From Octopus sinensis (taxonomy: Eukaryota), in assembly GCF_006345805.1 (NCBI RefSeq), contig NC_043001.1, positions 49,228,001 through 49,292,000 of the forward strand: a DNA stretch of 64,000 nt, written 5' to 3'. The stretch's first letter is position 1; each line of letters starts with the position of its first letter. Positions 3,051 to 64,000 of the stretch are shown piece after piece. A model generated the notes under the pieces. It searched no databases. It saw nothing but the letters and a program-made list of their open reading frames with translations, and was not told the DNA's origin. Position numbers and translations under genes: made by a program.

Positions 3051-3129
3051 TGAAGCAAGGTGGTGCCCTAGCATGGCTGCAGTTCAATAACTGATATAAG
3101 TTAAAGATAAACAATAAAAGAAACACACA

Positions 3130-4090: not shown

Positions 4091-4791
4091 AGGTATTTTC
4101 TTTCATACGTACACACATACACACGTATATATGTACGTAATCACAATAGAGTGGAAGCAACAAGCAAAGTTGGATCTTTTCTATTCTGAAGCCAGTTTTT
4201 TCAAATTTTTCCTACTGAACCAAACAATTTTAAACTTCGTATACTGGTAGAATGTGTCAAAAGTAAACTTAATTGTAAACCAGAATGAAAACGGAATTGT
4301 AACTTCTAAGTTTAACGTTGTTTAATAATTAGAATTTTAACCAATGATATTCCGTCATTCGGCTTTATTTTATTTACTCCGTCTCGACCACCAATTTCGT
4401 GACGTATTAAACAATGTAAACAAGCTATAGTCAGCCACCTTCTAATAACAAAAGTTTGTCTTTGAAGTTACCGTCTAGGGGAAGCATTGATGTACATGTG
4501 TGTGTGTGTGTGTTTGATGGGGTGTGGGAGACAGTATGTTGTGTAAGTGAAGTGCTTCTGTTAGTGTGTGTGAAGAGACAGAGAGAGTAATGTGTGAAAG
4601 AGAGAGATAACTGAAATTTTTTACTCGGTGTATGTGTATATGCCTGAATGTATGTGTGTATGTATCTGTGTATGTGTATGTATGTATGTATGTATGGCCG
4701 ATTCAATGTAATTTTTACACATACTTACACACACACACACACATACATACACACACACATGCAGACATACATATACACATACACCGAGTAA

Positions 4792-12797: not shown

Positions 12798-13399
12798 AAT
12801 AATAATAGTAATAATAATTATTTTGTTGTTGTTGTTGTTGTTGTCATCGTCGTTGTTATTATTAAGCATGTGTGTGTGTTCAGGAAAAATGAATAAAAAC
12901 GTTCATTCTCCTTCCTATCAAACTCAAAAACAAAAGCAAAAAAGAAAACCAACAACAAATAAGCAAAAACTTAATCAAAATAACTGCAGCTTCAGCAGAA
13001 CAGCTTAATGTATGGAAGTGGTGATGATGGCAGTGGTGTTAGAGTTATTGAAAAGGTTTACGATGGAAATATTTAAAAAACTATTAACTCTCAAAATTAG
13101 TTGATTGACAGCTTGCTAAAACAACAGTGAGAATTTTTTTTATATAACAAACAACTTAATATAAATTTGAACACCCACTCCATAAATTAAGATTCACTTA
13201 TTTTGTCAATAGTAAAATATTCAAGTGGAATGTATACACTGGCTGGTATCAAGATATTCTAACTATTTAAGGTTCAAGTTATTTGTCTGCTTAGATAAGC
13301 AACATATTTTGAGGGACAGAGGAAATAGTAATTGCAAAATTTATATACAACTTGTGGAAATTGCATATATATATATACAGGGTGCATGTACATTGTTTT

Positions 13400-14045
13400 T
13401 GATTTTGTTGACTACACAGAATAGTAGGGTCAGTTGGGCACTGTCTGTGAGAAAAACAGCACCATCACACAATTCACTCTGCCAGAAATTTGGAAACAAC
13501 ATGCTGTACTACTTGGCATTCATGCCGCAAGCTCTAATGTAAATATTTCTGAGTATTTGGGTGCCAATCTGAGGACAATGCAATCTGAGGACATGTACTC
13601 AGAATGATAATAATCAAACATCCAGTCAAAATCATGGCGTTTGAAGTGATCACTAGTGATGGCAACGTTATGCCTCCATTCATCTTCCAAAACAGCCTCA
13701 GACTCAACATCAAGTGCCTGGAGGAGGTAGTGCTGCCCTGGGTCAAGAGGGTGATTGTTGCAAGATACTATGTCTAGCAACAGGACTCTGCACCATGCCA
13801 CACAAGCAGGAGAACCCAGTTATGGCTGTCAGACAATTTCTGCAACTACATCACCCCTAACATCTGGTCACCTAACTCCCCAGACTACAACCTCCTTGAT
13901 TATTATGTGTGGGTTGCAGTTGAGCGAGAGACCGACAAAACTCCTTGTAACACCAAAGATGAACTGAAGGCAAGGATTTTAACAGCATTCACCAACTTAA
14001 ACAAGGAGACCTTTCAGAAGAGTTGCAGGAGATTCTGAAGTCATC
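13400..14045 (+). mobile_element. Tc1/mariner maT (DD37D)-like transposase relic
   Basis: QQDSAPCHTSRRTQLWLSDNFCNYITPNIWSPNSPDYNLLDY gives 37 residues between the 2nd and 3rd Asp. Confidence 0.75.
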
Positions 14046-25510: not shown

Positions 25511-25922
25511 TACTCTTTTACTCTTTTACTTGTTTCAGTCAGTTGACTATGGCCATGCTGGAGCACCACTTTTAGTCGAGCAACTCGACCCTGGGACTTA
25601 TTCTTTGTAAGCCCAGTACTTATTCTATCGGTCTCTTTTGCCAAACTGCTAAGTGACAGGGACATAAACACACCAGCATCTGTTGTCAAGCAATGCTAGG
25701 GGGACAAACACAGACACACAAACATACACGCACACATATATATACACATACATATATATGACGGGCTTCTTTCAGTTTCCGTCTACCAAATCCACTCACA
25801 AGGCTTTGGTCAGCCTGAGGCTATAGTAGAAGACACTTGCCCAAAGTGCCACGCAGTGGGACTGAACCCGGAAACATGTTGTTGGTAAGCAAGCTACTTA
25901 CCACACAGCCACTCCTATGCCT
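25511..25922 (-). mobile_element. SINE family B copy
   Basis: Colinear with 955-1354. Confidence 0.85.
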
Positions 25923-26295
25923 AAGAATCTAGGACACTATCTCTATGTGTCTATATGATTTGTGCAGGAACTTTATCCTTTTTGTGTGACTGACATCTTG
26001 ATGTAGTAATGTTGTGGCATAATGTTGATGTGTTTAGGTGTTTGTGGATGATTTGGACATGTAATTATTTTAGTCATGTGGTTGTGTTAGCATTTTGATA
26101 TTATTGATGATGTATTTAGATCAGGTATGAGCAAAATTTTTCAACAAGCAGACTGCATGAGACATGAAACATCACCATCTGATGGGTCAGACTACTAACA
26201 AATATTCAAGTTTATTTTCCATTGGTGTGCCAATCAGAAAGTCACTAGGGCCACACTTTGCCCATGGCTGGTTGAAATGCTTGTCAGTGGTTTAA

Positions 26296-29965: not shown

Positions 29966-30139
29966 GATTCAGTCATTTGATGCGGCCATGTCGAACAAAT
30001 TGATCCCAAGACTTATTCTTTGTGAGCCTAGTACTTATTCTATCGGTTTCTTTTGCTGAACCACTAAGTTATGGGGATGTAAACACACCTGCATTGGTTA
30101 TCAATGGTGGGGGGAAAAACAAACACACACACACACACA

Positions 30140-30175
<36 letters not shown>

Positions 30176-30383
30176 TACACACACACACACACACACACAC
30201 AAATATACAAACAGATATGATGGGCTTCTTTCAGTTTCCATCTACCAAATCCACTCACAAGGTTTTGGTCAGCCTGAGGCTATAGTTGAAGACACTTGCC
30301 CAAGGTGCCATGCAGTGGGACTTGGACCGGAACCATGTGGTTGGGAAGCAAGCTTCTTAACACACAGCCACTCCTGCGCCTAT
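29966..30383 (-). mobile_element. SINE family B copy
   Basis: Colinear with 955-1354, with an expanded (AC)n tract. Confidence 0.8.
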
Positions 30384-30714: not shown

Positions 30715-32100
30715 TTGGACGGTGGTGGTGGTGACGGCGGTGTTGGTCTTGGTGTTAGTGTAGGTTGTGCTGGTGGTGGTGTTGATGTTCGTGATTCGTG
30801 GTGGTGGTGGTGGTGGTGTTGATGATGTCAATGGTGAAGATAAGCTACGATGTTACCGGTAGTGGTGGGTGATGGTGATGGCAGTGGTGGTTCTGATGGT
30901 GTGGTGTTAGTGGTGATAATGATTGTGATGGTGGCGGTGGTGATGGCCGTAGTGGTGGTGATGATGGATGGTCACGGCGGTGATGGTAGTGGTGCCGACA
31001 GCGGCGGCGATGGTGATGGCCGCGGTGGTCGTGGTAGCGATTATAGTGATTGTAGTGGTAGAGGTGATGATGGTGGAGATGATGGTGGCGATGGTGGCGA
31101 TGCGGCTAGCGGCGGCGCCGGTGGTTGTCAAGTTAGTAAAGGCGTGTGAAGGTGGCGGCGAGGGCGATGGTATTGCTGCTGGTGGTGGCGGCGGTGGATC
31201 GGACGCTGTTTTTAGCAAATAGCATTGTTGTGGCGGTGGTGGCGGTGACTGCTATGATGTAAATTGTGTGCGGAGTAACTTTGATGACGGAGACGTGCTG
31301 CTGGTTGTCATGGTGACAGTAGTGTGGTGCCTCAGGCCTGTGCTTGGACTACAGGGATGTTGCTGGTAGCTATGGTGGTGGCAGCGCTGAGGGTAGCGGT
31401 CTTTGTAATAATGGTGGCGGTGGTGGTGGTGGTGGTGTTTATTTTTTTATGGTAGTGGTGTGAGGAGTTACTTTGGTGATGAGATTGGTTTGTAGTTATG
31501 GTTATTAGCGATACCTGAACGGGATGTTCAGGGCAGTGCTGCTTCTGTTGTTGTTGTTGTTGATGGTGTCGGCGGCAGCAGTGGTGGTGGTGGTGGTTTA
31601 AGCGTTGATATGATATTCGTGCGGTGATAAGCCATGCTTAAATGATGGTGGATGTTTATGGTGGTGGTGGTGGTATATTTTTACAAATTTTATTGATGAT
31701 GACGACGACGTCATTCGTCGACTCCGACTCCGACGACGATGATGACGATGATGATGGTGGTAATGATGACGATGTTAATGATGACGATGATGATGACGAC
31801 AATGATTACGGCGACCAGTACGACGACGATGACGTTGGTGCAACGGTGACGACGATGACGACGACGACGACGAGATGATGATGATGATGATGATGACGAC
31901 GACGACGACGATGATGACTATGATGATGACGTTGATGATGGTGGTAATGATGATGACGACAATGATTACGGCCACCAGTACGACGATGACGTTGGTGCAA
32001 CGGTGACGACGACGACGAGATGATGATGACGACGACGACGACGACGACGACGACGGTAATGAGGTGGCGGCGATGACAGTGCTTGTGCTGGTATCGACGA
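30715..32100. repeat. (GGT)n/(GAT)n/(GAC)n low-complexity block with an internal ~165-bp duplication
   Basis: Direct reading; gacaatgattacggc..ccagtacgacg occurs at ~31798 and ~31958. Confidence 0.9.
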
Positions 32101-33142: not shown

Positions 33143-33521
33143 GGAGGCGCAATGGCCCAGTGGTTAGGGCAGCGGACTCGTGGTCGTAGGATCGCGGTTT
33201 CGATGCCAAGACCGGGCGTTGTGAGTGTTTATTGAGCGAAAACACCTAAAGCTCCACGACGCTCCGGCAGCGGGTAGGTGGCGAACCCTGCTGTATTCTT
33301 TCACCACAACTTTCTCTCACTCTTTCTCCCTGTTTCTGTTGTACGTGTATTTCAAAAAGCCAGCCTTGTCACACTCCGTGTCATGCTGAATCTCCCCGAG
33401 GACTACGTTAAGAGTACGCGTGTCTGTGGAGTGTTCAGCCACTTGCACGTTAATTTCACGAACAGGCTGTTCCGTTGACCGGATCAACTGGAACTCTCGT
33501 CGTCGTAACCGACGGAGTGCC
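33143..33521 (+). mobile_element. tRNA-derived SINE, family A (my label)
   Basis: Box A tggcccagtgg, box B-like ggtttcgatgcc; copies at 38458-38831 and 41360-41739. Confidence 0.85.
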
Positions 33522-34639
33522 AAAGGAAAAAGGTAGGGTATGAAATCAATACACCAAGTTAACGAAATGATCAGTTATTCAGCTAAATATTATCAGCTGA
33601 CTATGTTATTCACTAGTAGGTAGACTACCTACATCTACAAGGTACCTGTTGATGTAGGTAGACTCTACCTACATCTACAAGGTACCTGTTGATAGACCGG
33701 TAAAGACTGACTTTCTTCTCCGGAGCCTGAACATACTTCAACCCTCATCAAATACTAACCTTCTATTAAGTTCAAATGAAACCCACAATGGAGTGTTGCT
33801 TACAGAACTTGGACGTTACTGCGGCTACATACACAAAAATCTGACATCGCATCCAAGGAAAGGTCACTCAACTGATTGGCGTGCACCGTTCAACTACTTT
33901 TAAAATTATCATTCAACAGAATAGAATTTTAAAATTAGAAATGAAATATTATGCTTTTCTGTAGCGCGTATAAAAAAGCACAGTGCGGTAAAATACGTCA
34001 AACAACTCGCGTGTTGCTTGATGTCATTTTCTTTGATTCATGAATATTTTCAATGACATCTTTTGTAATATAAAATATATTTCAAAACTTTAACCCATAA
34101 AATTGCATTTTCTCCTGTTGTAATTGTTTGCACAAAGATTCTGGAAAAAATAAACAACAACCTTAAAACGAACTACACTGTGTAACAAAGTTTTAATTTC
34201 ATTTTTGGTATTATTTTATTTTGGTCAGTAAGTATTTTTTCCTATTTGTTTCTATCTAGAAATCAAAGGAAATGACTACTATTCCCTCCAAGCTTTGCTT
34301 TCGTATCCTGGACATCAATGTTTTGAAACTGATCTATTTTCCATTAAATTTCAAACAGATTCGTCGCTGAGTATTCTGCACAATATCACACATTCCCTTG
34401 TCAGTTGCTTGATCTTAACCACTTGAACATGTCCCTTAGTGCCTGGCAATATATGCATCTCTTATCATGAGCAGGAGTCGTGGGGGAGCATCATAGCCAT
34501 ATGTTGAGAGGGATTTTTTAGGGTTTGACTAAATGTAAGAAAAGCAAAGTTTTAAGGAAATAGCCATTCTTCATATTTTCTAGGGGTATAGCAAATAGGA
34601 AATAACAGTTGTTATCCAAGGATAAAAATTGCGTTACAC

Positions 34640-38457: not shown

Positions 38458-38831
38458 GGAGGTGCAATGGCCCAGTGGCTAGGGCAGCGGACTCGCGGTC
38501 GTAGGATCGCGGTTTCGATTCCCAGACCGGGCGTTGTGAGTGTTTATTGAGCGAAAACACCTAAAGCTCCACGAGGCTCCGGCAGGGATGGTGGTGATCC
38601 TTGCTGTACTCTTTCACCACAACTTTCTCTCACCCTTACTTCCTGTTTCTGTTGTACCTGTATTTCAAAGGGCCGGCCTTGTCACTCTCTATGTCACGCT
38701 GAATATCCCCGAGAACTACGTTAAGGGTACACGTGTCTGTGGAGGGCTCAGCCACTTACACGTTAGTTTCACGAGCAGGCTGTTCCGTTGATCAACCGGA
38801 ACCCTCATCGTCGTAACCGACGGAGTGCTTC
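38458..38831 (+). mobile_element. SINE family A copy
   Basis: Colinear with 33143-33521. Confidence 0.85.
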
Positions 38832-39894: not shown

Positions 39895-40789
39895 AAGGCA
39901 TAGGTGTGTGGTTAAAGAGGTTCGGTTGGCAACCAAGTGGTTGTAGGTTCAGTCCCACTGCGCGGCACCTGGGGCAAGTGTCTTCTATTATTGCTTTTGG
40001 TCGACCAAATGCCTTGTTAGTGTATTTGACACACGGAAACTGTGGAAGCCCGTCAAATATATATATGTGTGTTTTGTGTTTGTAAGCGCGCGCGTGTTTG
40101 TTTCCCCACTGTCTGGCAACCGGTACTGGTTTGTTTACGTCTCCATGACTTAGCAATTCGGTGAAAGAGACCGGTAGAACAATTAGCAGACTTAGAGATA
40201 AGTACATGGGTCGATCTGTTCAACTGTAGGCGTAGGAGTGGCTGTGTGGTAAGTAGCTTGCTTACCAACCACATGGTTACGGGTTTAATCCCACTGCGTG
40301 GCACCTTGGGCAAGTGTCGGGCCGACCAAAATTTTGTGAGTGGATTTGGTAGACGGAAACTGAAAGAAGCCCGTCGTATATATGTATATATATATGTATG
40401 TGTGCGTATGTATATGTGTATATGTTTGTGTGTTTGTGCCCCCCCTACCCCCAACATCGCTTGACAACCGATGCTGGTGTGTTTACGTCCCCATAAAATA
40501 GCGGTTCGGCAAAAAGAGCCCGATAGAATAAGTACTAGGCTTACAAAGAATAAGTCCTGGGGTCGATTTGCTCGACTAAAGCCGGTGCTCCAGCATGGCC
40601 GCGGTCAAATGACTGAAACAAGTAAAAGATTTAAATCAGTAACTAAAGGCGCAGGAGTGGCTGTGTGGTAAGTAGCTTGTTTACCAACCACATGGTTCCG
40701 GGTTCAGTCCCACTGCGTGGCACCTTGGGCAAGTGTCTTCTGCTATAGCCTCGGGCCGACCAAAGCCTTGTTAGTGGATTTGGTAGATG

Positions 40790-41359: not shown

Positions 41360-41739
41360 GGAGGTGCAATGGCCCAGTGGTTAGGGCAGCGGACTCGCGG
41401 TCATAGGATCGCGGTTTCGATTCCCAGACCGGGCGTTGTGAGTGTATTGAGCGAGAAAAATACCTAAAGCTCCACGAGCTCCGGCAGGGGATGGTGGTGA
41501 TCCCTGCTGTACTCTTTCACCCAACTTTCTCTCACTCTTACTTCCTGTTTCTGTTGTACCTGTATTTCAAAGGGCCGGCCTTGTCACCTCTGTGTCACGC
41601 TGAATATCCCCGAGAACTACGTTAAGGGTACACGTGTCTGTGGAGTGCTCAGCCACTTACACATTAATTTCACGAGCAGGCTGTTCCGTTGATTCGGATC
41701 AACCGGAACCCTCGTCGTCGTAACCGACGGAGTGCTTCC
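41360..41739 (+). mobile_element. SINE family A copy
   Basis: Colinear with 33143-33521. Confidence 0.85.
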
Positions 41740-46046: not shown

Positions 46047-46280
46047 ACTCTTTACTCTTTTACTCTTTTACTTGATTCAGTCATTTGACTGCGGCCATGC
46101 TGGAGCACCGCCTTTAGTCGAGCAAATCGACCCCGGGACTTATTCTTTGTAAGCCCAGTACTTATTCTATCGGTCTGTTTTGCCGAACCGCTAAGTGACG
46201 GGGACGTAAACACACCAGCATCGGTTGTCAAGCAATGCTAGGGGGACAAACACAGACACACAAACATATACACACACACT

Positions 46281-46331
<51 letters not shown>

Positions 46332-46514
46332 ATATATATATACATATATACGACAGGCTTCTTTCAGTTTCCGTCTACCAAATCCACTCACAAGGCATTG
46401 GTCGGCCCGGAGCTATAGCAGAAGACACTTGCCCAAGATGCCACGCAGTGGGACTGAACCCGGAACCATGTGGTTGGTTAGCAAGCTACTTACCACACAG
46501 CCACTCCTGCGCCT
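46047..46514 (-). mobile_element. SINE family B copy
   Basis: Near-identical to 955-1354. Confidence 0.85.
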
Positions 46515-46865
46515 GTTTGTTCACTTTCTGTCATGTTTGGTCTCTTATTCGTTGGCTTGCCATTTCCCGCTGTCTTCTTGCCGTCGGTGCCACCAGAGGG
46601 GAATAGTATTATAGTTTGAAGGCGCGAAATTGTGTTGATCCTAGAGGATTTGTTGACCAGCTGCATCTGTTTTCTGTTTGTGCATTTATTTTACGTTTTT
46701 TAACTTTTACGCACGCACACACACACACACACACACACACATGAAGTAAATAGCCCAAGAGTTTTCTAAATACGCAGTTGAATTTTTAGTAAATGTACTT
46801 TTACTATGTCAGAAATATTAAATTTCTAAATCTCTCATAGAGATATGTACGGTGGTGGGGCGATA

Positions 46866-48464: not shown

Positions 48465-48700
48465 AGAAATGTATTAAGAATAACCTCGGTCGAGATTACA
48501 AACATCTTTGGCTAGTTCAACATTGTTGTAAACGCTAATTCGATTGGTTGACACGTTGGTCTCTACTACGCTCGCACCGCTGGTTATAACTTGGCGCGAT
48601 TTGCCTCCGTATTTTCGCGCCATAGTGCCAAGCAGCCAATCACAGCTTTCCATTTCTGAAGTTCACTGGGAGCCTGGTGAACCTTATATACTCTCTGTGT
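48465..48700 (+). promoter_or_regulatory. Left arm of ~210-bp inverted repeat; putative Pol II promoter facing into the array (antisense to ORF1)
   Basis: ATTGG 48543-48547, GGCGCG ~48593, E2F consensus TTTCGCGC 48613-48620, CCAAT 48636-48640, TATATA 48685-48690; reverse complement of 54162-54372. Confidence 0.55.
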
Positions 48701-48738
48701 GGTCAGAGGTTCGCCCTGAGAAGGACTGGAAACCTAAG

Positions 48739-50578
48739 TATTTCTTTATTACCCACAAAGGGGCCACGAAGAGGGGGACATTACAAGACGGGACATGGGG
48801 TACATAAAGTAAAAATAAAATATGAAGTAAAGATGAATTATATGTAATGAGATGGAACGGCTTACGAACCCCCAACTCGCAGTTCCGTTTAAAATACAAT
48901 TGTACATTTCACAATTACATATATTCCAGTTCAAAATACAATTTTACAGTTACATATATTCCAGTTCAAAGTACAATAATTTTACAATTTACATTTTAAC
49001 ATTACATATATTCCTGTTCAAAATACAACTTTACATCTTACAATTTTACAATTAACAATTTTACTTTTTAACCTTACATATATTCTAATTCTTTTATATT
49101 GGACGTTCGTCCGTCATATATTCTAATAGGTCCATTTGGTCTATTACATTTGGTAAATTGTCATACCGTACATAATGCGTTATATGAATAGCATTAAATA
49201 TCTTTTTTAATTTTGTGTATGTTTCTTTTTCTATAATTGCGCCTTTTACATCGTCACCATACAGTTTTGGGTTCACCTTCACCCTGACCAACCCTTTCCT
49301 ACCTGCAAGTCTCTTTTCCACTTCTGTATTCTTGATATACATCACAACTGCTTTCAGGTTTTTTCCTGTAGGCCTTCTTCCATATTTACACGATTCCAAC
49401 TGTTCGTTCACTTTTGTCTCCCATTCTTGTTCAAACTCTGTCCTTGGCCGCTCTCTCGCCTTCTCTTTTACTTCCTGTTCTTTGCATGTTCTCTCTTCTT
49501 TTTCTTCTGTTATCTTGCTTTCGATTTTTTTCTTTTTTAGATCTTTCGGTGGTGATTCCACCCTTGTTCTCTTCCTATCTTCTGTTCTTTCCTCTTCTGC
49601 ACTTGCTCGTTCTTCTCCCGTATCCTCATTTAGCTGCTCCTCCATTCGTGCCTCCTCCGCTTTCGCTTCCTCCTGCACTTCTCCCTCCTCCACACACGCA
49701 TCTTTACACTCCTCTATTACAGCCTCCGGTGCTTTTGTTTTTTCCCGCGGGCACACATCCTTCATGTGGCCCCTCGATTTACAATTATAGCAGATTGGGG
49801 GTCTTCCCTCTACCACAACTCTAAGCCGTGTCTCATCAGGGTAGACCAACTCCTCCGGGATGTTGTACAGGTCTCGCACGGTTATGTGTGCCAGAACCTG
49901 CACCGTATATCCCCACCACTTAACCTCTGCTGACTTCTCCACCTTCAACACCTCCACACTATCCTTGCAGTTGAAAAGTACTGCCACCAGCAACCTCTCC
50001 ATATTAAATTCGGGCGAAATTCTATTGATTCTCATCCTCACTGCCCTCCTTCCGCAGTAACTTGGTAGTAAAGTCCACTTATCCGATTTCAAAATTCTTG
50101 TTGCATTCTTTTTTGCTTCATTTTCTGTTTCAAAATATACCACCACCGTGGCATATTTCCTTCCTCTTTTGAAAAATGTGGGTTCACCCTCAATTTCCTT
50201 CAGACACTTTTCTACTTCTTCCATTTCTGCTACTTCAATTTTTAGACTCCACACACCATGTCCTGTACGTTATCGTACGCTTCTCCGCGTTGCTTTCCTC
50301 CTCCTCGGACGGTGTGACTCTCACGCAGTCACCCTCCCTCTTCAAACTGTCGAAATGCTTTTGTAAAGTCTTCTGTTCGCCCACCACTTCCTCCATTTCC
50401 AGTTCACCGGCAACTAGGCCTCCGCCTGCCGCTCGCGCGTAAGTCTGCTCTTGCATTTTCAAGAATCTCAAGAAAAAAAAACTATTCCACGTCCTCCAAC
50501 GAACTCGAACTCACAACCTCTTCACAATGACGCACTCGAAACAAACACACCAGAATAACTCCAAATAACTCACTCAAA
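48739..50578 (-). mobile_element. ORF1-only (HAL1-like) Tx1/L1-type non-autonomous retroelement, unit 1 (1840 bp)
   Basis: Short 5' leader, gag-like ORF1, AT-rich 3' UTR, AATAAA tail (plus-strand tttatt 48745-48750), no ORF2; bounded by 15-bp direct repeats. Confidence 0.75.
49094..50456 (-). CDS. Tx1/L1-type ORF1 (gag-like nucleic-acid-binding) protein, ~454 aa after correcting one frameshift near 50240
   Basis: MQEQTYARAA N-terminus, RRM-like central region, CCHC knuckle GRPPICYNCKSRGHMKDVC, E/K-rich linker, basic C-terminal domain. Frameshift lies in a T homopolymer (5 T vs 7 T in unit 2). Confidence 0.72.
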
Positions 50579-50593
50579 GACTGGAAACCTAAG

Positions 50594-52404
50594 TATTTCT
50601 TTATTACCCACAAAGGGGCCACGAAGAGGGGGACATTACAAGACGGGACATGGGGTACATAAAGTAAAAATAAAATATGAAGTAAAGATGAATTATATGT
50701 AATGAGATGGAACTGCTTACGAACCCCCAACTCGCAGTTCCGTTTAAAATACAATTTCACAATTACATATATTCCAGTTCAAAATACAATTTTACAGTTA
50801 CATATATTCCAGTTCAAAGTACAATAATTTTACAATTTACATTTTAACATTACATATATTCCTGTTCAAAATACAACTTTACATCTTACAATTTTACAAT
50901 TAGCAATTTTACTTTTTAACCTTACATATATTCTAATTCTTTTATATTGGACGTTCGTCCGTCATATATTCTAATAGGTCCATTTGGTCTATTACATTTG
51001 GTAAATTGTCATACCGTACATAATGCGTTATATGAATAGCATTAAATATCTTTTTTAATTTTGTGTATGTTTCTTTTTCTATAATTGCGCCTTTTACATC
51101 GTCGCCATACAGTTTTGGGTTCACCTTCACCCTGACCAACCCTTTCCTACCTGCAAGTCTCTTTTCCACTTCTGTATTCTTGATATACATCACAACTGCT
51201 TTCAGGTTTTTTCCTGTAGGCCTTCTTCCATATTTACACGATTCCAACTGTTCGTTCACTTTTGTCTCCCATTCTTGTTCAAACTCTGTCCTTGGCCGCT
51301 CTCTCGCCTTCTCTTTTACTTCCTGTTCTTTGAATGTTCTCTCTTCTCTCTCTTCTGCTATCTTGCTTTTGATTTTTTTTCTTTTTTAGATCTTTCGGTG
51401 GTGATTCCACCCTTGATCTCTTCCTATCTTCTGTTTTTTCCTCTTCTGCACTTGCTCGTTCTTCCTCATTTAACTGCTCCTCCATTCGTGCTTCCTCCGC
51501 TTTCGCTTCCTCCACACACGCATCTTTACACTCCTCTATTACAACCTCCGGTGCTTTTGTTTTTTCCCGCGGGCACACATCCTTCATGTGGCCCCTCGAT
51601 TTACAATTATAACAGATTGGGGGTCTTCCCTCTACCACAATTCTGAGCCGTGTCTCGTCAGGGTAGACCAACTCCTCCGGGATGTTGTACAGGTCTCGCA
51701 CGGTTATGTGTGCCAGAACCTGCACCGTATATCCCCACCACTTAACCTCTGCTGACTTCTCCACCTTCAATACCTCCACATTATCCTTGCAGTTAAACAG
51801 CACTGCCGCCAGCAACCTCTCTATATTAAATTCGGGTGAAATTCTATTGATTCTCATCCTCACTGCCCTCCTTCCGCAGTAACTTGGTAGTAAAATCCAC
51901 TTATCCGATTTCAAAATTCTTGTTGCATTCTTTTTTGCTTCATTTTCTGTTTCAAAATATACCACCACCGTGGCATATTTCCTTCCTCTTTTGAAAAATG
52001 TGGGTTCACCCTCAATTTCCTTCAGACACTTTTCTACTTCTTCCATTTCTGCTACTTCAATTTTTTTCGACTCCACACACCACGTCCTGTACGTTATCGT
52101 ACGCTTCTCCGCGCTGCTTTCCTCCTCCTCGGACGGTGTGACTCTCACGCAGTCACCCTCCCTCTTCAAACTGTCGAAGTACTTTTGTAAAGTCTTCTGT
52201 TCGACCACCACTTCCTCCATTTCCAGTTCACTGGCAACCAGGCCTCTGCCTGCCGCTCGCGCGTAAGTCTGCTCTTGCATTTTCAAGAATCTCAGGAAAA
52301 AAAAAAACTATTCCACGTCCTCCAACGAACTCGAACTCACAACCTCTTCACAATGACGCACTCGAAACAAACACACCAGAACAACTCCAAATAACTCACT
52401 CAAA
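50594..52404 (-). mobile_element. ORF1-only Tx1/L1-type retroelement, unit 2 (1811 bp)
   Basis: Colinear with unit 1; 3' portion nearly identical to unit 1; bounded by 15-bp direct repeats. Confidence 0.75.
50942..52280 (-). CDS. Tx1/L1-type ORF1 protein, ~445 aa after correcting one +1 homopolymer frameshift near 51375
   Basis: ORFs 51279-52286 and 50942-51259 join if one T is removed from an 8-T run (7 T in units 1 and 3); same CCHC knuckle. Confidence 0.72.
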
Positions 52405-52419
52405 GACTGGAGGCCTAAG

Positions 52420-54105
52420 ACTGTTTCTTTATTACCCACTAAGGGGCCACGAAGAGGGGGACATTACAAGACGGGACATGGGGTGTAAAAAATGAATTAG
52501 ATGTAATGAGATGGAACGGCTTACGAACCCCCAACTCGCAGTTCCGTTTAAAATACAATTGTACATACAATTTTACAGTTACAATAATTTTACAATTCTA
52601 CATGTCAACATTACATATTTCAAAATACAACTTTAAATTTTACAATTCTAATTTTTTACATTAGACGCTCGTCCGTCATATAATCCAACAGGTCCGTTTG
52701 CTCTATAACATCTGGCAATTTATCGTACCGCACATAATGCGTTATATGCATAGCGCTAAACATCTTTTTTAATTTTATATATGTCTCTTTGTCTATAATG
52801 ACGCCTTTCACGTCGTCACCATACAGCTTTGGGTTCACCTTCACCCTGACCAACCCTTTCTTACCTACAAGTCTCTTCTCCACTTCTGTATTCTTGATAT
52901 ACATTACGACTGCCTTCAAGTTTTTTCCTGTAGGCCTTCTTCCATATCTGCACGATTCCAATTGCTCGTTCACTCTTGCCTCCCATTCTTGTTCAAACTC
53001 TGTCCTTGGCCGCTCTCTCGCCTTCTCTTTTACTTCCTGTTCTTTGTATGTTTTCTCTTCTCTCTCTTCTGCTATCTTGCTTTTAATTTTTTTCTTTTTT
53101 TGATCTTTCGGTGGTGATTCCACCCTTGATCTCTTCATGTCTTCCGTCTTTTCCTCTTCTGCACTCTCTCGTTCTTCCTCACTTAACCGCTCCTCCATTC
53201 GTACTTCCTCCGCTTTCGCCTCCTCCACACACGCGTCCTTACATTCCTCCATCTCAACCTCCGGTGCTTTAGTTTTTTCTCGCGGGCACACATCCTTCAT
53301 GTGGCCCCTTGATTTACAATTGTAGCAAATTGGGGGTCTTCCCTCTACCACAACTCGGAGCCGCGTCTCGTCAGGGTAGACCAGCTCCTCCGGGATGTTG
53401 TACAGGTCTCGCACGGTAATGTGTGCGAGAACCTGCACCGTATATCCCCACCATTTCACCTCCGCTGACTTCTCCACCTTCAGTACTTCCACATCATCCT
53501 TGCAGTTAAACAGCACTGCTGCCAGCAACCTTTCCATATTAAATTCGGGTGAGATTCTATTGATTCTCATCCTCACTGCTCTCCTTCCGCAGTAACTGGT
53601 AGCAAAGTCCACTTATCCGATTTCAAAAGTCTTGTTGCGTTCTTTTTTGCCTCATTTTCTGTTTCAAAAATACCACTACCGTGGCATACTTCCTTCCTCT
53701 TTTGAAAAATGTGGGTTCACCCTCAATTTCCTTCAGACATTCTTCTACTTCTTTCATTTCCGCTACTTCAATTTTTTTGGACTCACACACCACGTCCTGT
53801 ACGTTATAGTACGCTTCTCTGCACTGCTTTCCTCCTCCTCGGACGGTGTGACTCTTACGCAGTCACCCTCCCTCTTTAAACTGTCGAAATACTTCTGTAG
53901 GGTCTTCTGTTCGACCACCACCTCCTCCATTTCCAGCTCACCGGCAACCAGGCCTCTGCCTGCCGCTCGCGCGTAAGTCTGTTCTTGCATTTTCAGGAAA
54001 AAAATTATTCCACGTCCTCCAACGAATTCGAACTCACCACCTCTTCACTTGAAATAAACACACCAGAATAATCACACCTGAATAACTCCAAATAACTCAC
54101 TCAAA
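52420..54105 (-). mobile_element. ORF1-only Tx1/L1-type retroelement, unit 3 (1686 bp), most diverged copy
   Basis: Colinear with units 1 and 2, shorter AT-rich 3' UTR, many third-position differences. Confidence 0.75.
52656..53990 (-). CDS. Tx1/L1-type ORF1 protein with single-base deletions between ~53595 and 53780
   Basis: ORFs 53763-53990 and 52656-53612 are colinear with unit 2; same knuckle and C-terminal domain. Confidence 0.68.
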
Positions 54106-54139
54106 GACTGGGGGCCTGAGACGAATATTCTTCTGAGAA

Positions 54140-54372
54140 ACCTTATTTATAGGCTTTACATGGCTCCCAATGAACTTCCGAAATGGAAAGCTGTGATTGG
54201 CTGCTTGGACTATGGCGCGAAAATAAGTCGAGACATTTTGCGCCAAGTTATAACCAGCGGTGCGAGCGTAGTAGAGACCAACGTGTCAGCCAATCGAATT
54301 AGTGTTTACATCAATGTTGAACCAGCCAAAGCTGTTTGTAATCTCGACCGAGGTCATTCTATATACTCTTCT
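54140..54372 (-). promoter_or_regulatory. Right arm of inverted repeat; putative Pol II promoter driving the sense strand of the array
   Basis: On the minus strand: reverse CCAAT at 54290-54294, E2F site TTTTCGCGCC (54214-54223), CCAAT (54196-54200), GGAAGT, TATAAATA (54151-54144) 31 nt before the first direct repeat. Confidence 0.6.
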
Positions 54373-54559
54373 TTGATAAAATAACATTTTTGAAGACATT
54401 CTTCAGAAATGTTATTTTCCCCCAAAAGGTCTTATTCATCCAACCTGTGTGGTTGTCTATCTTCATAACTGACTTCTTCGATGCATAGTGAAAAAATTTT
54501 GTCTTTTAGGGGAGAAAAGAAGAGTTATTCCACAAGGATTAGTGTTAACCATAGGTCAA

Positions 54560-55129: not shown

Positions 55130-55166
<37 letters not shown>

Positions 55167-55383
55167 ACACATGTCTGTGTGTGTTTGTGTGTGAAGGTGC
55201 GTGGCTTACTGGTATATACACGTGTGTATATACAAAGCCATAGCTATGTATAAACATAGACAAACATAATATACATACATATACATTTGTGTGTCAGTAA
55301 GTGTGTATGTGTTTCTGTGTATGAAAAATAAAACAAGGAGCAAGATCATGAAACATGGAGACTAACAAATAATACACAAATAA

Positions 55384-55770
55384 TAGGCGCAGGAGTGGCT
55401 GTGTGGTAAGTAGCTTGTTTACTAACTACATGGTTCCGGGTTCAGTCCCACCTTGGGCAAGTGTCTTCTTGTATAGTCTCGGGCCGACCAAAGCTTTGTG
55501 AGTGGATTTGGTAGACGGAAACGAAAGAAGCCCGTCGTATATATATATATATATATGCGTGTGTGTGTTTGTGTGTCTATGTTTGTCCCCCTAGCATTGC
55601 TTGACAACCGATGCTGGTGTGTTTATGTCCCCGTTACTTAGCGGTTCGACAAAAGAAACCGATAGAATAAGTACTGGGCTTACAAAAGAATAAGCCCCGG
55701 GGTCGAGTTGCTTGATTAAAGGCGGTGCTCCAGCATGGCCGCAGTCAAATGACTGAAACAAGTAAAAGAG
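55384..55770 (+). mobile_element. SINE family B copy
   Basis: Full head to (gtaaaaga) tail. Confidence 0.85.
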
Positions 55771-56379
55771 TCAGGTAAGCGAAATGCGTGACTGAAAAAA
55801 GCGTACAAATATAAAGCAAAACAACAATGGAAGAAGTGTACAATGAAAATAAATACACCATTGCATATGTGTGTGTGAGTGTGTACACAAGCGGTAGAGT
55901 CGTGCGCATTCTTTGGGCATGTATACTTGGTTATCAAAGAATGTTACTCTAGGAGCTGCCTTCCAAGTCATATGATGTTATCAGCTTCAAGTATGCAAAC
56001 TTGGTCAAGGGATGCACTTCGACACTTGGTGGCTAAAAGATGTTGCCGAAGAGGGATATGATACGACATTCAAAGGCATTTTGGATCGATGCTAAGCTTC
56101 TGCCGCCTTATTTTCGTTTTAGGTAGTGGCAGTCTATGTCACTGTTTATGTGGAAATTATGTGTACTTGTTAGTATTTTTCGGGTTTTAATATCAATGGC
56201 TCGGTTTCATAAACCTGGGCCAGGGGTCATAGGTTGTTTTCGTGGTTAATGGATAATATGTGAATATAATCGGGGTTTATACCAGGCTTATATCAATATT
56301 AGCCATAAAATAATATTCAGTCTGCTGAGTTGATTCGATAACACAACACGTAAAAACATAACGGTATATCTTTTATACC

Positions 56380-56788: not shown

Positions 56789-56818
<30 letters not shown>

Positions 56819-56910
56819 CTTCTTCTTCTTCTTCTTCTTCTTCTTCTTCTTCTTCTTCTCCTCCTCCTCCTCCTCCTCCTCTCTCCTCCTCCTCGTTCTT
56901 CTTCTTCTTG
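56789..56910. repeat. (CTT)n/(CCT)n polypyrimidine tract
   Basis: Direct reading. Confidence 0.95.
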
Positions 56911-57237: not shown

Positions 57238-58426
57238 TAAACACACACACTCACACACACCCAAAGACACACACTCACACACACAAACACACACAACCAC
57301 ACACACTCACACATACATCCACCCCCACACACAAACGCACACACCTACATACACACTCACACACACACACACATAAACTCACACACAGACAAACACATAC
57401 ACATAAACGGATACAAATTCATATAAATATCTGTGTGTGTGAGTTTATGTGAGTGCATTCGCTAGGGAAAAACGTGTTTGAAAAATTTTGGACTTGATTT
57501 CTAAAATAAAATAAAATCCGTTTATATAATTGGCGACCACCAAGGCAAGGAATGAAGTATTTTTGGCTTATGGATCCCTGTGCTTTTATTTACTCTACTG
57601 AACCTACGTAGCCATTCACTTGGTTCAGTCATTTGACTGCGGCCATGCTGGAGCACCACATTTAGTCGAGCAAATCGGCCCCAGGACGTATTCTTTGTAA
57701 TCCTAGTACTTATTCTATCGGTATTTTATGCCGAACCGCTATGTTACGTGGACGTAAACACCAGCATCGGTTATCAAGCGATGTTGGGGGGGGGGAGGTG
57801 AGGGCAAACACAGACACACTAACAAACACACACACACACCACACACCAAATAAACACACACACTCACACACACCCAAAGACACACACTCACACACACAAA
57901 CACACACAACCACACACACTCACACATACAACACCCCCCACACACAAACGCACACACCTACATCACACTCACACACACACACACATAAACTCACACACAG
58001 ACAAACACATACACATAAACGGATACAAATTCATATAAATATCTGTGTGTGTGAGTTTATGTGAGTGCATTCGCTAGGGAAAAACGTGTTTGAAAAATTT
58101 TGGACTTGATTTCTAAAATAAAATAAAATCCGTTTTATATATTGGCGACCACCAAGGCAAGGAATGAAGTAATTTTGGCTTATGGATCCCTGTGCTTTTA
58201 TTTACTCTACTGAACCTACGTAGCCATTCACTTGGTTCAGTCATTTGACTGCGGCCATGCTGGAGCACCACATTTAGTCGAGCAAATCGGCCCCAGGACG
58301 TATTCTTTGTAATCCTAGTACTTATTCTATCGGTTTTTTATCCGCCACCGCTATGTTACGTGGACGTAAACACCAGCATCGGTTATCAAGCGATGTTGGG
58401 GGGGGGGAGGTGAGGGCAAACACAGA
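57236..58426 (+). repeat. Recent ~610-bp tandem duplication (CA-rich tract, unique segment, SINE B 3' half)
   Basis: 57236-57812 and 57848-58426 are near-identical. Confidence 0.85.
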
Positions 58427-59019
58427 ACATACACAACAAACACACCACACACACACACACACACACACGACGGGATTCTTTTAGTTTCCGTCTACCACAT
58501 CCGCCCACAAGGCTTTGGTCGGCCCGAGGCTATAGTAGAAGACACTTGCCCAAGGTGCTACGGAGTGGTACTGAACCTGGAACCATGTGATTAGTAAACA
58601 AGCTACTTACTGCACAGCCACTCCTGCGCCTATTATGTTGAAAAAAAAATTAAATTAAATTTAAATCTAATATGATTAAACTCAATTAAATATTATTAGA
58701 CTGGTACTCCTTCGGTTACGGCGACTAGGGTTCCAGTTGATCCGATCAACAGAAACGCCTGCTCGTGAAATTAACGTGTAAGTAACTAAGCATTCCACAG
58801 ACACGTGTAACATTAACGTAGTTCTCAGGGAGATTCAGCGTGACACAGAGTGTGATAAGGTTGGCTTTTTGAAATACAGGTACATGTCATTTTTGTCAGT
58901 TGAGTGGATTGGAGCAACGAGAAATAAAGTGTCTTGCTCAAGGACACAACGCGTCGCTAGGAATTGAATTCACGACCTTACGATCGTAAGTCGAATATCC
59001 TAACCACTAAGCCACGCTT

Positions 59020-59376
59020 ACTCTCTTTTACTTGTTTCTGTCATTTGACTGCGGCCATGCTGGAGCACCGCCTTTAATCGAGCAACTCGACCCCAGGACT
59101 TATTCTTTTGTAAGCCCAGTACTTATTCTATCGGTTTCTTTTGCCGAACCGCTAAGTAACGGGGACATAGACACACCAGCATCGGTTGTCAAGCAATACT
59201 AGGGGGACAAACACAGACACACGAACATACACGCACACACATATATATATACATATATACGACGGGCTTTTTTCAGTTTCCGTCTACCAAATCCACTCAC
59301 AAGGCTTTGGTCGGCCCGAGGCTATAGTAGAAGACACTTGCCCAAAGTGCCACGCAGTGGGACTGAACCCAGAACC
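59020..59376 (-). mobile_element. SINE family B copy, 5' truncated
   Basis: Colinear with the other copies; lacks the start of the tRNA head. Confidence 0.8.
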
Positions 59377-63591: not shown

Positions 63592-63609
63592 ATTTAGACG
63601 ACAGTTTAT

Positions 63610-64000
63610 TCACTGCACCCTATACATATGAATCTCTCTTTGCCTTGCCCCGATTCGTGGCTGAACAAGCCGGAAAGCATGCTCTTTCGCTTTTTGTGGA
63701 GGGGCAGCAGACCTCTTGTAAGGCGCTCTATTTGCTACCAAAAGCCGCTGAAGGGTGGGTTAGGGATGCCGTGGCTAAAAATGCGCAGACATGCGCTCAG
63801 GCTTAGGCACCTCTGGCTTTACCTGGACGGTGAGCAAATGTGGTCTCCGTTCGTCAGGCTGTTATTTCCACAGTTTACATCGTTTACCAAACTGAACCCA
63901 TGGATCAAATGTAGACCGAAAATCAACTGGCCAGCTTGTTCCAAAGAACATTCGGTCCGGGGCCTATGGATAATTACCAAAAGTACCTGGCCTGGCAATG
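63610..64000 (+). mobile_element. Tx1/L1-clade ORF2 fragment (region after the RT core), runs off the window
   Basis: Frame reading GGLGMPWLKMRRHALRLRHLWLYLDGEQMWSPFVRLLFPQF contains the L1/Tx1 GGLG motif; frameshifted upstream. Confidence 0.7.

What the first reader, a model, noticed from the sequence alone, without database searches (positions are those of the whole stretch)
48465..54372. Array enclosed by ~210-bp inverted repeats that look like convergent E2F/NF-Y/TATA promoters
Seen: 48465-48674 is the reverse complement of 54162-54372 with modest divergence. Each arm carries two CCAAT/ATTGG boxes, a pair of GGCGCG/TTTCGCGC E2F-type sites and a TATA box 10 nt after the shared GGGAGCC, all facing inward. 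Removing the units leaves a palindrome with a ~100-bp loop. Known: E2F plus CCAAT is a cell-cycle promoter grammar; Mutator TIRs hold inward promoters; Xenopus Tx1L inserts into a DNA element (Tx1D). Inference: either a foldback element that is the specific host of the retroelement, or a locus producing sense and antisense RNA over transposon ORF1 copies (dsRNA, endo-siRNA/piRNA source, ADAR substrate).
Basis: partly seen in the sequence, partly recalled or inferred. Interest (0 to 1): 0.8.

Follow-up and report, generated by a model that had tools for sequence, protein, structure and literature searches.

The report
Retroelement array splitting an octopus palindrome
The two inverted arms are real, and they are the two halves of a ~0.55-kb palindrome in the Octopus sinensis genome that was split at its exact centre by three head-to-tail copies of a decayed, ORF1-only L1/Tx1-type retrotransposon; the arms look like promoters, but nothing here shows that they fire.

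Summary
Observation confirmed. The arms at 48465-48688 and 54148-54372 are reverse complements (about 89% identical, 9.9% substitutions), with weaker homology inward to 48715 and 54121. They occur nowhere else in the window.

Between the arms lie three minus-strand units (48739-50578, 50594-52404, 52420-54105). Each carries a frameshifted ORF1-type gene (CCHC knuckle, no RT). Four copies of one 15-nt target-site duplication (CTYAGGNNNCCAGTC) bound and separate them. With the units removed, a palindrome remains, and the duplicated site lies at its symmetry centre.

The window is Octopus sinensis. Relatives in O. sinensis and O. bimaculoides include full-length LINEs (APE+RT+zf-RVT, closest solved relative human L1 ORF2p) that share the units' 3' tail. 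They also include a solo ORF1-only copy with a perfect 16-nt TSD, other head-to-tail arrays, and an (ATT)n-flanked copy. None of these has such arms.

So the arms are split target DNA, not part of the retroelement. Whether the palindrome is a multi-copy host element like Tx1D, and whether the arms fire as promoters or give dsRNA, could not be tested here. This is a new member of a known kind and of moderate interest.

The parts
48465..48723 (+). Left arm of the palindrome. The well-conserved core is 48465-48688. Weaker homology runs to TTCGCC at 48715, and 48716-48723 (CTGAGAAG) is unpaired spacer. Promoter-like motifs face right (inward): ATTGG 48543, TTGGCGCG 48591, TTTTCGCGCC 48613, CCAAT 48636, GGGAGCC 48668, TATATA 48685.
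48724..48738 (-). TSD copy 4 (minus strand CTTAGGTTTCCAGTC), between unit 1 and the left arm.
   Evidence: 4 matches in the window, 0.20 expected by chance
48739..50578 (-). Unit 1, an ORF1-only L1/Tx1-type retroelement copy. Its 3' tail ...GGGTAATAAAGAAATA ends at 48739. The ORF is split by a frameshift into 50235-50471 (78 aa) and 49094-50254 (386 aa, CCHC knuckle). The 3'UTR carries 35-nt and 15-nt tandem repeats at 48887-49064.
50579..50593 (-). TSD copy 3 (CTTAGGTTTCCAGTC), identical to copy 4.
50594..52404 (-). Unit 2, 2% substitutions from unit 1. ORF pieces are 51279-52286 (335 aa, intact N-terminus, frameshift near the C-terminus) and 50942-51259 (105 aa).
52405..52419 (-). TSD copy 2 (CTTAGGCCTCCAGTC), preceded by GT as in copy 1.
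52420..54105 (-). Unit 3, the oldest copy, 8.5-9.4% substitutions from units 1 and 2. ORF pieces are 53763-53990 (75 aa) and 52656-53612 (318 aa). Its 5' end, TTTGAGTGAGTTATTTGG, directly follows TSD copy 1.
54106..54120 (-). TSD copy 1 (CTCAGGCCCCCAGTC), abutting the inner end of the right arm.
54121..54372 (-). Right arm of the palindrome (core 54148-54372). The same motif set, read on the minus strand, faces left (inward): ATTGG 54294, TTGGCGCA 54246, TTTTCGCGCC 54222, CCAAT 54200, GGGAGCC 54168, TATAAATA 54151. The TATA box lies 31 nt upstream of TSD copy 1 and 46 nt upstream of the first base of unit 3.

Best explanation
A non-coding palindrome of about 0.55 kb (two ~250-nt arms around a 23-nt spacer) already existed in the Octopus sinensis genome. 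Its central spacer was hit by target-primed reverse transcription of a non-autonomous, ORF1-only member of an octopus L1/Tx1-type LINE family. This duplicated a 15-17-nt target (GT)CTCAGGCCCCCAGTC.

The same site then came to hold three head-to-tail copies, each separated by one TSD copy. This happened either by re-insertion into the regenerated TSD or by tandem duplication of [unit+TSD]. Units 1 and 2 are only 2% apart, so they are probably a recent local duplication.

The inverted repeats are therefore the two halves of the split target. They are not ends of the retroelement.

Shown: the anatomy, the TSDs, the family relationships, and the absence of arms at other family insertions.

Inferred: that the palindrome came first. 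Each arm carries a plausible RNA polymerase II promoter layout (two NF-Y-type CCAAT boxes, a near-canonical TTTCGCGCC E2F site, and a TATA box 31-39 nt from the TSD). If active, the right arm would transcribe the array in sense, starting about 15 nt upstream of unit 3. The left arm would transcribe it in antisense. This activity is unproven. I put the chance that at least one arm is a working promoter at about 0.4.
For: - Arms are real and unique in the window.
- Four copies of CTYAGGNNNCCAGTC lie exactly at the three unit boundaries and both arm junctions, and nowhere else. 0.20 are expected by chance and 0 of 100 shuffles reach 4.
- Homology among unit 3' ends, and with relatives, stops right after ...AATAAAGAAAYA. 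What follows differs per locus, as expected of a TSD.
- A solo ORF1-only relative in O. sinensis (L005 2497-4186) has the same ...GGGTAATAAAGAAATA tail and a perfect 16-nt TSD of unrelated sequence.
- Full-length LINEs with homologous ORF1 (35% identity, E=9e-39), APE, RT and zf-RVT share the 3' tail.
- Their RT is closest to human L1 ORF2p (9e-40) versus R2 (3e-24).
- Head-to-tail arrays also occur in L001, L002 and L005. The first units of L001 and L002 are 5'-truncated, and subfamilies are mixed, which implies recurrent insertion.
- None of these arrays has flanking inverted repeats.
- The TSD lies at positions 284-298 of a 587-nt reconstruction of the empty site whose symmetry centre is about 291.
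- The motif grammar is rare by chance, 0.05 per 64 kb.
- Arm CpG observed/expected is 1.04-1.11, against 0.64 for the window.
Against: - Arm divergence (K2P 0.106+-0.02) equals the divergence of unit 3 from units 1 and 2 (0.092-0.102). The palindrome is therefore not demonstrably older than the first insertion.
- Arm differences are unusually rich in transversions (10 ts: 12 tv versus 123:35 in the units, Fisher p=0.003) and partly clustered. This is not simple neutral decay from identical copies.
- No empty copy of the palindrome was available to prove the pre-insertion state.
- Promoter motifs are short, and the grammar was defined post hoc.
- One E2F-like site and the TATA box differ between the arms.
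- There are no transcript data.
Confidence: 0.6

Rival explanations
1. The palindrome is one copy of a multi-copy foldback or MITE-type DNA element, and it is the dedicated target of this retroelement subfamily, as Tx1D is for Tx1L. Its inward promoter supplies transcription to elements that land just downstream of its start site.
For: - Tx1-clade precedent: Tx1 in the piggyBac MITE Tx1D, and SINEU-3 tandem insertions sandwiching a TSD at one position of Mariner-N4_AMi, possibly transcribed from the flank (PMC4494074).
- A sister copy in the same genome is flanked on both sides by (ATT)n, suggesting targeted insertion (L006).
- The same 15-nt site is occupied by up to three copies.
- Near-perfect ~280-nt palindromic MITE-like elements exist in O. 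sinensis (L006 9083-9362).
- A predicted start about 30 nt after each TATA box falls 0-9 nt from the TSD.
Against: - There is no target-site duplication of any usual length around the palindrome.
- There is no second arm copy in the window or in about 110 kb of other octopus loci. This only excludes very high copy numbers.
- The TSD motif is absent from all other loci.
- The other ORF1-only insertion and the other arrays lie in unrelated flanks.
Confidence: 0.3
2. The left arm is a local inverted duplication of the array's 5' flank. It was made by a replication- or repair-based fold-back event at about the same time as the first tandem duplication of the unit. On this view the palindrome is a by-product of rearrangement at a fragile repeat, not a pre-existing target.
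For: - Arm divergence equals the divergence of unit 3 from units 1 and 2.
- There is no TSD around the arms.
- Short CTCAGG/CCTGAG repeats sit at the centre and could serve as microhomology.
- A 177-nt, 98%-identical inverted duplication lies inside a related LINE in L006. A 19-nt mini-palindrome lies 5 nt outside the right arm. Both show that such events happen in this genome.
Against: The inverted copy would have to start precisely at the outer edge of the 3' TSD, so that removing the units restores a clean A-spacer-A' structure. A pre-existing palindrome explains this without coincidence.
Confidence: 0.2
3. The arms are active convergent promoters. The locus works as a sense-plus-antisense RNA source (dsRNA, endo-siRNA or piRNA precursor, ADAR substrate) against this LINE family.
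For: - Promoter-like grammar is present on both arms and faces inward.
- The CCAAT boxes and the TTTTCGCGCC site are conserved in both arms.
- The arms are relatively CpG-rich.
Against: - No expression or small-RNA data could be consulted.
- The convergent arrangement follows automatically from insertion into any palindrome.
- The TATA boxes and one E2F-like site have diverged between the arms.
- Each unit ends in AATAAA followed by a GU-rich stretch. That would tend to stop sense transcripts after one unit (sequence).
Confidence: 0.12
4. The arms are terminal repeats of a composite retroelement (DIRS-like inverted terminal repeats, Penelope-like pseudo-LTRs, or a twin-priming inversion), and the units are its interior.
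For: DIRS and Penelope-like elements can carry inverted terminal sequences that contain promoters (general knowledge).
Against: - TSDs bound each unit, not the arms.
- No RT, tyrosine recombinase or GIY-YIG domain is present.
- Relatives with identical termini lack the arms.
- Rfam finds no hammerhead or other family.
- A twin-priming inversion would lie at the 5' side of the insertion and consist of element sequence.
Confidence: 0.03

Closest known systems
Tx1L inside Tx1D (Xenopus), and SINEU-3 inside Mariner-N4_AMi (crocodilians); Tx1-clade retroelements that land at one site of a non-autonomous DNA transposon (PMC4494074)
   Same: An L1/Tx1-type retroelement sits inside a non-retroelement sequence that has inverted-repeat symmetry. 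Head-to-tail copies sandwich one TSD. Transcription from the flanking host sequence is possible.
   Different: Here the host sequence has not been shown to be mobile or multi-copy. It has no TSD and no other copy in the DNA examined. Its whole length is a palindrome with promoter-like arms, rather than a typical short-TIR MITE.
HAL1 (half-L1), the mammalian ORF1-only non-autonomous derivative of L1 (PMC5753468)
   Same: The units keep only an ORF1-type gene plus the LINE's ends. They share the 3' tail of full-length LINEs in the same genome. They have TSDs and 5'-truncated copies, and they have diversified into subfamilies (35-57% protein identity).
   Different: The octopus units have no poly(A) tail (they end ...AATAAAGAAATA). 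ORF1 is the CCHC-knuckle type rather than the L1 coiled-coil/RRM/CTD type. They pile up in head-to-tail arrays.
Microsatellite- or repeat-specific Tx1-clade LINEs (Kibi, Koshi, Keno; cited in PMC4494074)
   Same: A sister LINE in O. sinensis (L006) is flanked on both sides by (ATT)n. Arrays with repeated junction motifs occur in L005.
   Different: The target of the window's subfamily is a unique-looking 15-mer, not a microsatellite or an RNA gene.
Foldback elements and palindromic MITEs
   Same: Two long inverted arms around a short spacer. Similar ~280-nt hairpin elements exist in this genome (L006 9083-9362).
   Different: There are no subrepeats in the arms, no TSD and no evidence of other copies. 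The arms are 10% diverged.
Cell-cycle (E2F plus NF-Y) TATA-containing Pol II promoters
   Same: Two CCAAT boxes with NF-Y-type flanks (RRCCAATC), a TTTTCGCGCCA site one base from the classic palindromic E2F site, and a TATA box about 45 nt downstream of the proximal CCAAT.
   Different: No gene lies downstream. In the empty site each 'promoter' would only transcribe the antisense of its twin. Activity is untested.

Membership tests
L1/Tx1-type non-LTR retrotransposon (for the units) | ORF2 with an APE endonuclease and a reverse transcriptase | tested here: not met
   The units encode only the ORF1-type protein. Full-length relatives in L005 and L006 do have Exo_endo_phos, RVT_1 and zf-RVT. The units are therefore non-autonomous derivatives, not autonomous members.
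L1/Tx1-type non-LTR retrotransposon (for the units) | ORF1 homologous to the ORF1 of autonomous LINEs | tested here: met
   35% identity, E=9e-39, to the ORF1 of the L005 LINE. A distant relative, P0161, is followed by an APE+RT ORF2. Pfam finds a CCHC knuckle at borderline score. An RRM fold was not tested.
L1/Tx1-type non-LTR retrotransposon (for the units) | Target-site duplications and 5' truncation, the signs of target-primed reverse transcription | tested here: met
   A 15-nt TSD in four copies in the window. A perfect 16-nt TSD around the L005 solo copy. The first units in L001 and L002 are 5'-truncated.
L1/Tx1-type non-LTR retrotransposon (for the units) | A 3' tail shared with the autonomous partner | tested here: met
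   ...TGTAATGTCCCC..GGCCCCTTGTGGGTAATAAAGAAATA is shared by the ORF1-only units and the LINE copies.
Tx1 clade specifically | Phylogenetic placement of the RT within Tx1 rather than L1 proper | not tested
   The support is only indirect. The best solved relative is human L1 ORF2p. A zf-RVT domain is present. L1-Tx1 families are reported in O. vulgaris (PMC13282606). One relative shows target-specific behaviour. No reference RT set was available.
TIR DNA transposon / MITE / foldback element (for the arms) | Terminal inverted repeats | tested here: met
   Arms of 224-258 nt, about 89-90% identical.
TIR DNA transposon / MITE / foldback element (for the arms) | A target-site duplication flanking the element | tested here: not met
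   No direct repeat abuts the arm ends. The only nearby 9-mer match, CTATCTTCA, lies 8 nt from one arm and 84 nt from the other, with no terminal homology.
TIR DNA transposon / MITE / foldback element (for the arms) | Multiple dispersed copies in the genome | tested here: inconclusive
   No other copy in the window or in L001-L006 by nhmmer --max. Only about 110 kb of O. sinensis DNA was searched, which excludes only very high copy numbers. No whole-genome search tool was available. A metagenome scan for a 23-mer gave 0 hits.
Tx1L/Tx1D-type host-guest pair | The same retroelement at the same site in many copies of the host element | not testable with these tools
   This needs a whole-genome search. 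Within this one copy the site holds three units.
RNA polymerase II promoter (E2F/NF-Y/TATA) | Core and proximal motifs in the correct order and spacing | tested here: met
   Motif positions are given. The grammar is found only on the arms, with 0.05 expected per 64 kb. It was defined post hoc.
RNA polymerase II promoter (E2F/NF-Y/TATA) | Transcription start sites or open chromatin at the predicted position | not testable with these tools
   No expression data were available. Exact-protein look-ups of window ORFs in assemblies, including Logan, found nothing.
dsRNA / small-RNA source locus | Overlapping sense and antisense transcripts, and small RNAs mapping to the array | not testable with these tools
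   No RNA data were available.
DIRS-like or Penelope-like composite element | RT with a tyrosine recombinase or a GIY-YIG nuclease, with terminal repeats bounding the element | tested here: not met
   No such domains are present. TSDs bound the units, not the arms. There are no ribozyme hits.

The most novel reading that the evidence does not exclude
The palindrome is a dedicated, multi-copy 'landing pad'. Its twin inward cell-cycle-type promoters guarantee that any Tx1-type element landing in its 23-nt centre is transcribed on both strands. That would make it either a promoter-lending symbiont of a promoterless retroelement or a built-in trap that turns each insertion into a dsRNA or small-RNA source against the family.
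Probability: 0.08. Interest if true: 0.7.

Novelty: new member of a known kind. Interest (0 to 1): 0.35.

Why it matters
If the palindrome proves to be a repeated element that this subfamily seeks out, octopus would offer a second clear case, after Xenopus Tx1L/Tx1D, of a LINE lineage living inside a DNA-element host. In this case the host appears to supply a promoter in both directions. That would bear on how promoterless or weak-promoter LINEs secure transcription, and on how genomes might turn insertions into silencing triggers.

Independently of the arms, the work shows an ORF1-only ('half-LINE') family in octopus. It shares its 3' tail with L1/Tx1-type LINEs and habitually builds head-to-tail arrays. 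This is useful for repeat annotation of cephalopod genomes, where such units are currently predicted as 'CCHC-type domain-containing' genes and are even fused into host gene models.

As it stands, the locus is one decayed insertion site of modest general interest.

Tried and rejected
- Arms as part of the unit or of a longer master element: rejected. Tandem units and all relatives lack the arms.
- Arms as tRNA-, snRNA- or ribozyme-derived: nothing from Rfam at E<=1 or ARAGORN. A single arm is not notably structured (z=-1.8).
- A larger palindrome beyond the arms: the only other inverted match (46062-46517 vs 55382-55771, 80%) is a common ~450-nt interspersed repeat placed asymmetrically. It is a coincidence.
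- TSD search around the arms: nothing convincing.
- Finding more arm copies:
  - The arm's 74-aa ORF was used as a protein query. Not even the query itself is in the database, so the test has no power.
  - A 23-mer scan of JGI metagenomes gave 0 hits.
  - Exact-protein look-ups of window ORFs gave 0 hits.
- The junction 15-mer as a 5'-transduced leader from the right-arm start site: considered because a start about 30 nt after the right-arm TATA box would fall at the start of the 17-nt repeat. It predicts three copies, not four, and the relative in L002 abuts units without it. The TSD reading is preferred.
- Assembly artefact (missed-adapter palindrome): rejected. The arms are 10% diverged, with different outer flanks.
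- Pfam and PDB searches on the ORF give only the CCHC knuckle.

Full report
**1. The observation**

The inverted repeat is real and sits at the stated coordinates. The repeat finder reports arms 48465-48607/54230-54372 (143 nt, 90%) and 48628-48688/54148-54208 (61 nt, 89%). blastn joins them into one 226-column match at 88.9% identity, E=1e-80. A gapped alignment gives 9.9% substitutions (K2P 0.106+-0.02). Weaker, indel-ridden homology continues inward to TTCGCC (48715) and GACGAA (54120-54125). The outer limit is about 48465/54372.

The arm occurs only twice in the window. An nhmmer profile run with --max finds it in none of six other octopus loci.

- two CCAAT/ATTGG boxes with NF-Y-type flanks;
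- a TTGGCGCG/TTGGCGCA site plus a conserved TTTTCGCGCC site;
- GGGAGCC, followed 10 nt later by a TATA box.

Both TATA boxes point inward. This combination occurs nowhere else in the 64 kb and is expected 0.05 times in Markov-1 simulations. The grammar was defined after the fact, and the two arms are one event, not two.

**2. What lies between the arms**

Three head-to-tail units lie on the minus strand. In substitutions, units 1 and 2 differ by 2%, and unit 3 differs from them by 8.5-9.4%.

Read on the minus strand, each unit has:
- a 5'UTR of about 115 nt;
- a gene of about 450 codons with one CCHC zinc knuckle, broken by frameshifts in all three copies;
- a 3'UTR with short tandem repeats;
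- a terminus ...GGGTAATAAAGAAA(T/C)A.

The 15-mer CTYAGGNNNCCAGTC occurs exactly four times in the window: before unit 3, between the units, and after unit 1 (48724, 50579, 52405, 54106). By chance 0.20 copies are expected, and 0 of 100 shuffles reach four. Homology among unit ends, and with relatives from other loci, stops right after AATAAAGAAAYA, and the 15-mer is specific to this locus. It is therefore a target-site duplication.

Joining the flanks with one TSD copy gives a 587-nt palindrome (-236 kcal/mol as DNA). Its symmetry centre, at about position 291, falls inside the TSD (positions 284-298). The arms stop pairing at TTCGCC/GACGAA. The unpaired spacer is 23 nt (CTGAGAAG plus the TSD).

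**3. Identity of the genome and of the units**

The window's intronless 535-aa MYST/KAT7-like ORF is an exact annotated product on Octopus sinensis chromosome CM016863.1 (GCA_006345805.1). Window position plus 49,228,000 gives the chromosome coordinate.

The unit protein has 305 relatives among 1.84 billion representative proteins. The closest named ones are all from O. bimaculoides, O. sinensis or O. vulgaris. None carries an RT domain. A distant relative from an ENA assembly is followed by an APE+RT ORF2.

Loci fetched from octopus assemblies settle the classification:
- L005 (O. sinensis) holds at least 3.5 full-length LINE copies in a 5.3-kb head-to-tail array. Their ORF1 is homologous to the window's (35% identity, E=9e-39). 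Their ORF2 has Exo_endo_phos, RVT_1 and zf-RVT domains.
- The RT of these copies is closest to human LINE-1 ORF2p (9e-40) and further from R2 (3e-24).
- The LINEs and the ORF1-only units share about 55 nt of 3' terminus.
- L005 also holds a solo ORF1-only unit (2497-4186) with the same tail and a perfect 16-nt TSD, GGATGTGATATAATGA.
- L001 and L002 (O. bimaculoides) hold head-to-tail ORF1-only arrays that begin with 5'-truncated units and, in L001, mix subfamilies.
- L006 (O. sinensis) holds a single full-length LINE flanked on both sides by (ATT)n.

L1-Tx1 LINE families are reported as recently active in O. vulgaris (PMC13282606).

The units are thus non-autonomous, ORF1-only ('half-LINE') members of an octopus L1/Tx1-type family. 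The family makes TSDs of 15-17 nt, lacks poly(A) tails and habitually forms arrays.

**4. What the arms are**

The arms are not part of the retroelement. The TSDs bound the units rather than the arms. Internal units and all relatives lack the arms. No other array examined has flanking inverted repeats.

The most economical reading is that a palindrome A-spacer-A' existed and was split in its spacer.

Tx1-clade literature offers a close parallel. Tx1 sits in the piggyBac MITE Tx1D. SINEU-3 copies sit at one position of Mariner-N4_AMi, often as tandem insertions sandwiching a TSD, and may be transcribed from the flank (PMC4494074). Together with the (ATT)n-flanked relative, this makes a 'dedicated host element' reading reasonable.

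The tests I could run do not support mobility of the palindrome:
- It has no flanking TSD.
- No second copy was found in the DNA available.
- The 15-mer target is absent from the other loci.
- Other family insertions lie in unrelated sequence.

Copy number in the whole genome could not be measured with these tools.

**5. Rival origin**

Arm divergence (0.106+-0.02) is the same as the divergence of unit 3 from units 1 and 2 (0.092-0.102). The arms' differences are rich in transversions (10:12 against 123:35, p=0.003) and partly clustered at 48598-48609. A local fold-back duplication made at about the time of the first unit duplication cannot be excluded. It would, however, need a breakpoint exactly at the outer edge of the 3' TSD.

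TSD copies 3 and 4 are identical, and units 1 and 2 differ by 2%. This fits a recent duplication of [unit+TSD]. The GT that precedes copies 1 and 2, but not 3 and 4, would fit a second insertion with a 15-nt rather than a 17-nt stagger. The data do not decide between re-insertion and unequal exchange.

**6. Promoter and dsRNA claims**

The layout is a credible Pol II promoter. The proximal CCAAT is about 45 nt upstream of the TATA box. The TTTTCGCGCCA site is one base from the classic palindromic E2F site. A start about 30 nt after each TATA box would fall 9 nt before the TSD on the left arm and at its edge on the right arm. CpG observed/expected is 1.04-1.11, against 0.64 for the window.

Several points weigh against reading more into it:
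- In the empty palindrome each promoter would transcribe only the antisense of its twin, so no host gene is served.
- Any insertion into the centre, in either orientation, would automatically get a sense promoter upstream and an antisense promoter downstream. The arrangement is therefore not evidence of function.
- The TATA boxes and one E2F-like site have diverged between the arms.
- All three ORFs are broken.
- No transcript or small-RNA evidence could be consulted.

I put promoter activity of at least one arm at about 0.4, and a dsRNA or small-RNA role at about 0.1.

**7. Verdict**

The locus is a decayed three-copy array of an ORF1-only L1/Tx1-type retroelement inserted at the centre of a promoter-like palindrome in O. 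sinensis.

It is a new member of a known kind: Tx1-type elements nested at a reused site of another sequence, and HAL1-like half-LINEs. Interest is moderate (0.35). The interesting reading, a multi-copy promoter-bearing landing pad, remains open at low probability. A single whole-genome search with the arm would decide it.

Noticed in passing
window 9595-11202 (-): An intronless 535-aa ORF with zf-C2HC, zf-MYST and MOZ_SAS domains, a KAT7/HBO1-like acetyltransferase. It is annotated in O. sinensis and nested inside a large WD40-repeat gene on the opposite strand. It looks like a retrogene.
   Followed up: partly
window ~30900-32100: A strong CpG island: up to 37 CpG per 250 nt, observed/expected above 2, GC 0.46, GC skew +0.38. 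It is by far the most CpG-dense stretch of the window.
   Followed up: no
window 955-1354, 25522-25926, 29990-30382, 40226-40629, 46062-46517, 55382-55771, 58233-58632, 59024-59376: A ~450-nt interspersed SINE/MITE-like repeat, shared with O. bimaculoides at 70-86% identity. Two copies happen to lie in inverted orientation about 1-2 kb outside the arms.
   Followed up: partly
window 33182-33523, 38495-38828, 41397-41735: A second ~340-nt interspersed repeat, 82-85% identical to L001 19610-19931.
   Followed up: no
window 54378-54418: A mini-palindrome with 19-nt arms and one mismatch: AAAATAACATTTTTGAAGA-CAT-TCTTCAGAAATGTTATTTT. It lies 5 nt outside the right arm. Its origin is unknown; it may be a fold-back scar.
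   Followed up: partly
window 48598-48609 vs 54233-54244: The differences between the arms cluster between the two E2F-like sites (GCGCGATTTGCCTC--CG vs GCGCAAAATGTCTCGACT). The right-arm version makes a better local hairpin of the two sites. Overall the arms' ts:tv ratio is 10:12, against 123:35 in the units (p=0.003).
   Followed up: partly
window 63598-63998 (+): A fragment of an RT of the same LINE superfamily, 59% amino-acid identity to the L005 RT. It runs off the window end.
   Followed up: no
L005 1-20850 (O. sinensis CM016867.1): A head-to-tail array of full-length L1/Tx1-type LINEs with a 5.3-kb period. Copies are 73-98% alike, and the junctions share (A)CTGAATACTCGTCAT. A 24-nt coding tandem repeat has expanded inside one ORF1 (9562-9777).
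   Followed up: partly
L006 9722-9777 and 15349-15371 (O. sinensis CM016872.1): A full-length LINE of the family flanked on both sides by (ATT)n, which looks like microsatellite-targeted insertion. The same LINE contains a 177-nt, 98%-identical inverted duplication inside its RT region (13307-13483 / 14094-13918).
   Followed up: partly
L006 9083-9362: A ~280-nt near-perfect palindrome (arms ~124 nt, 97% complementary, 31-nt loop). It is a hairpin MITE-like element in the same genome.
   Followed up: no
proteins P0087, P0045, P0010: Public octopus gene models fuse this ORF1 into host genes (a WD40-repeat protein and an RGS-domain protein) or name it 'EPM2A-interacting 1-like'. These are probably annotation artefacts caused by intronic copies.
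   Followed up: no
window 56789-56909, 55131-55164, 46281-46350: Long microsatellites near the locus: (CTT)40, (AC)17 and (TA)36.
   Followed up: no
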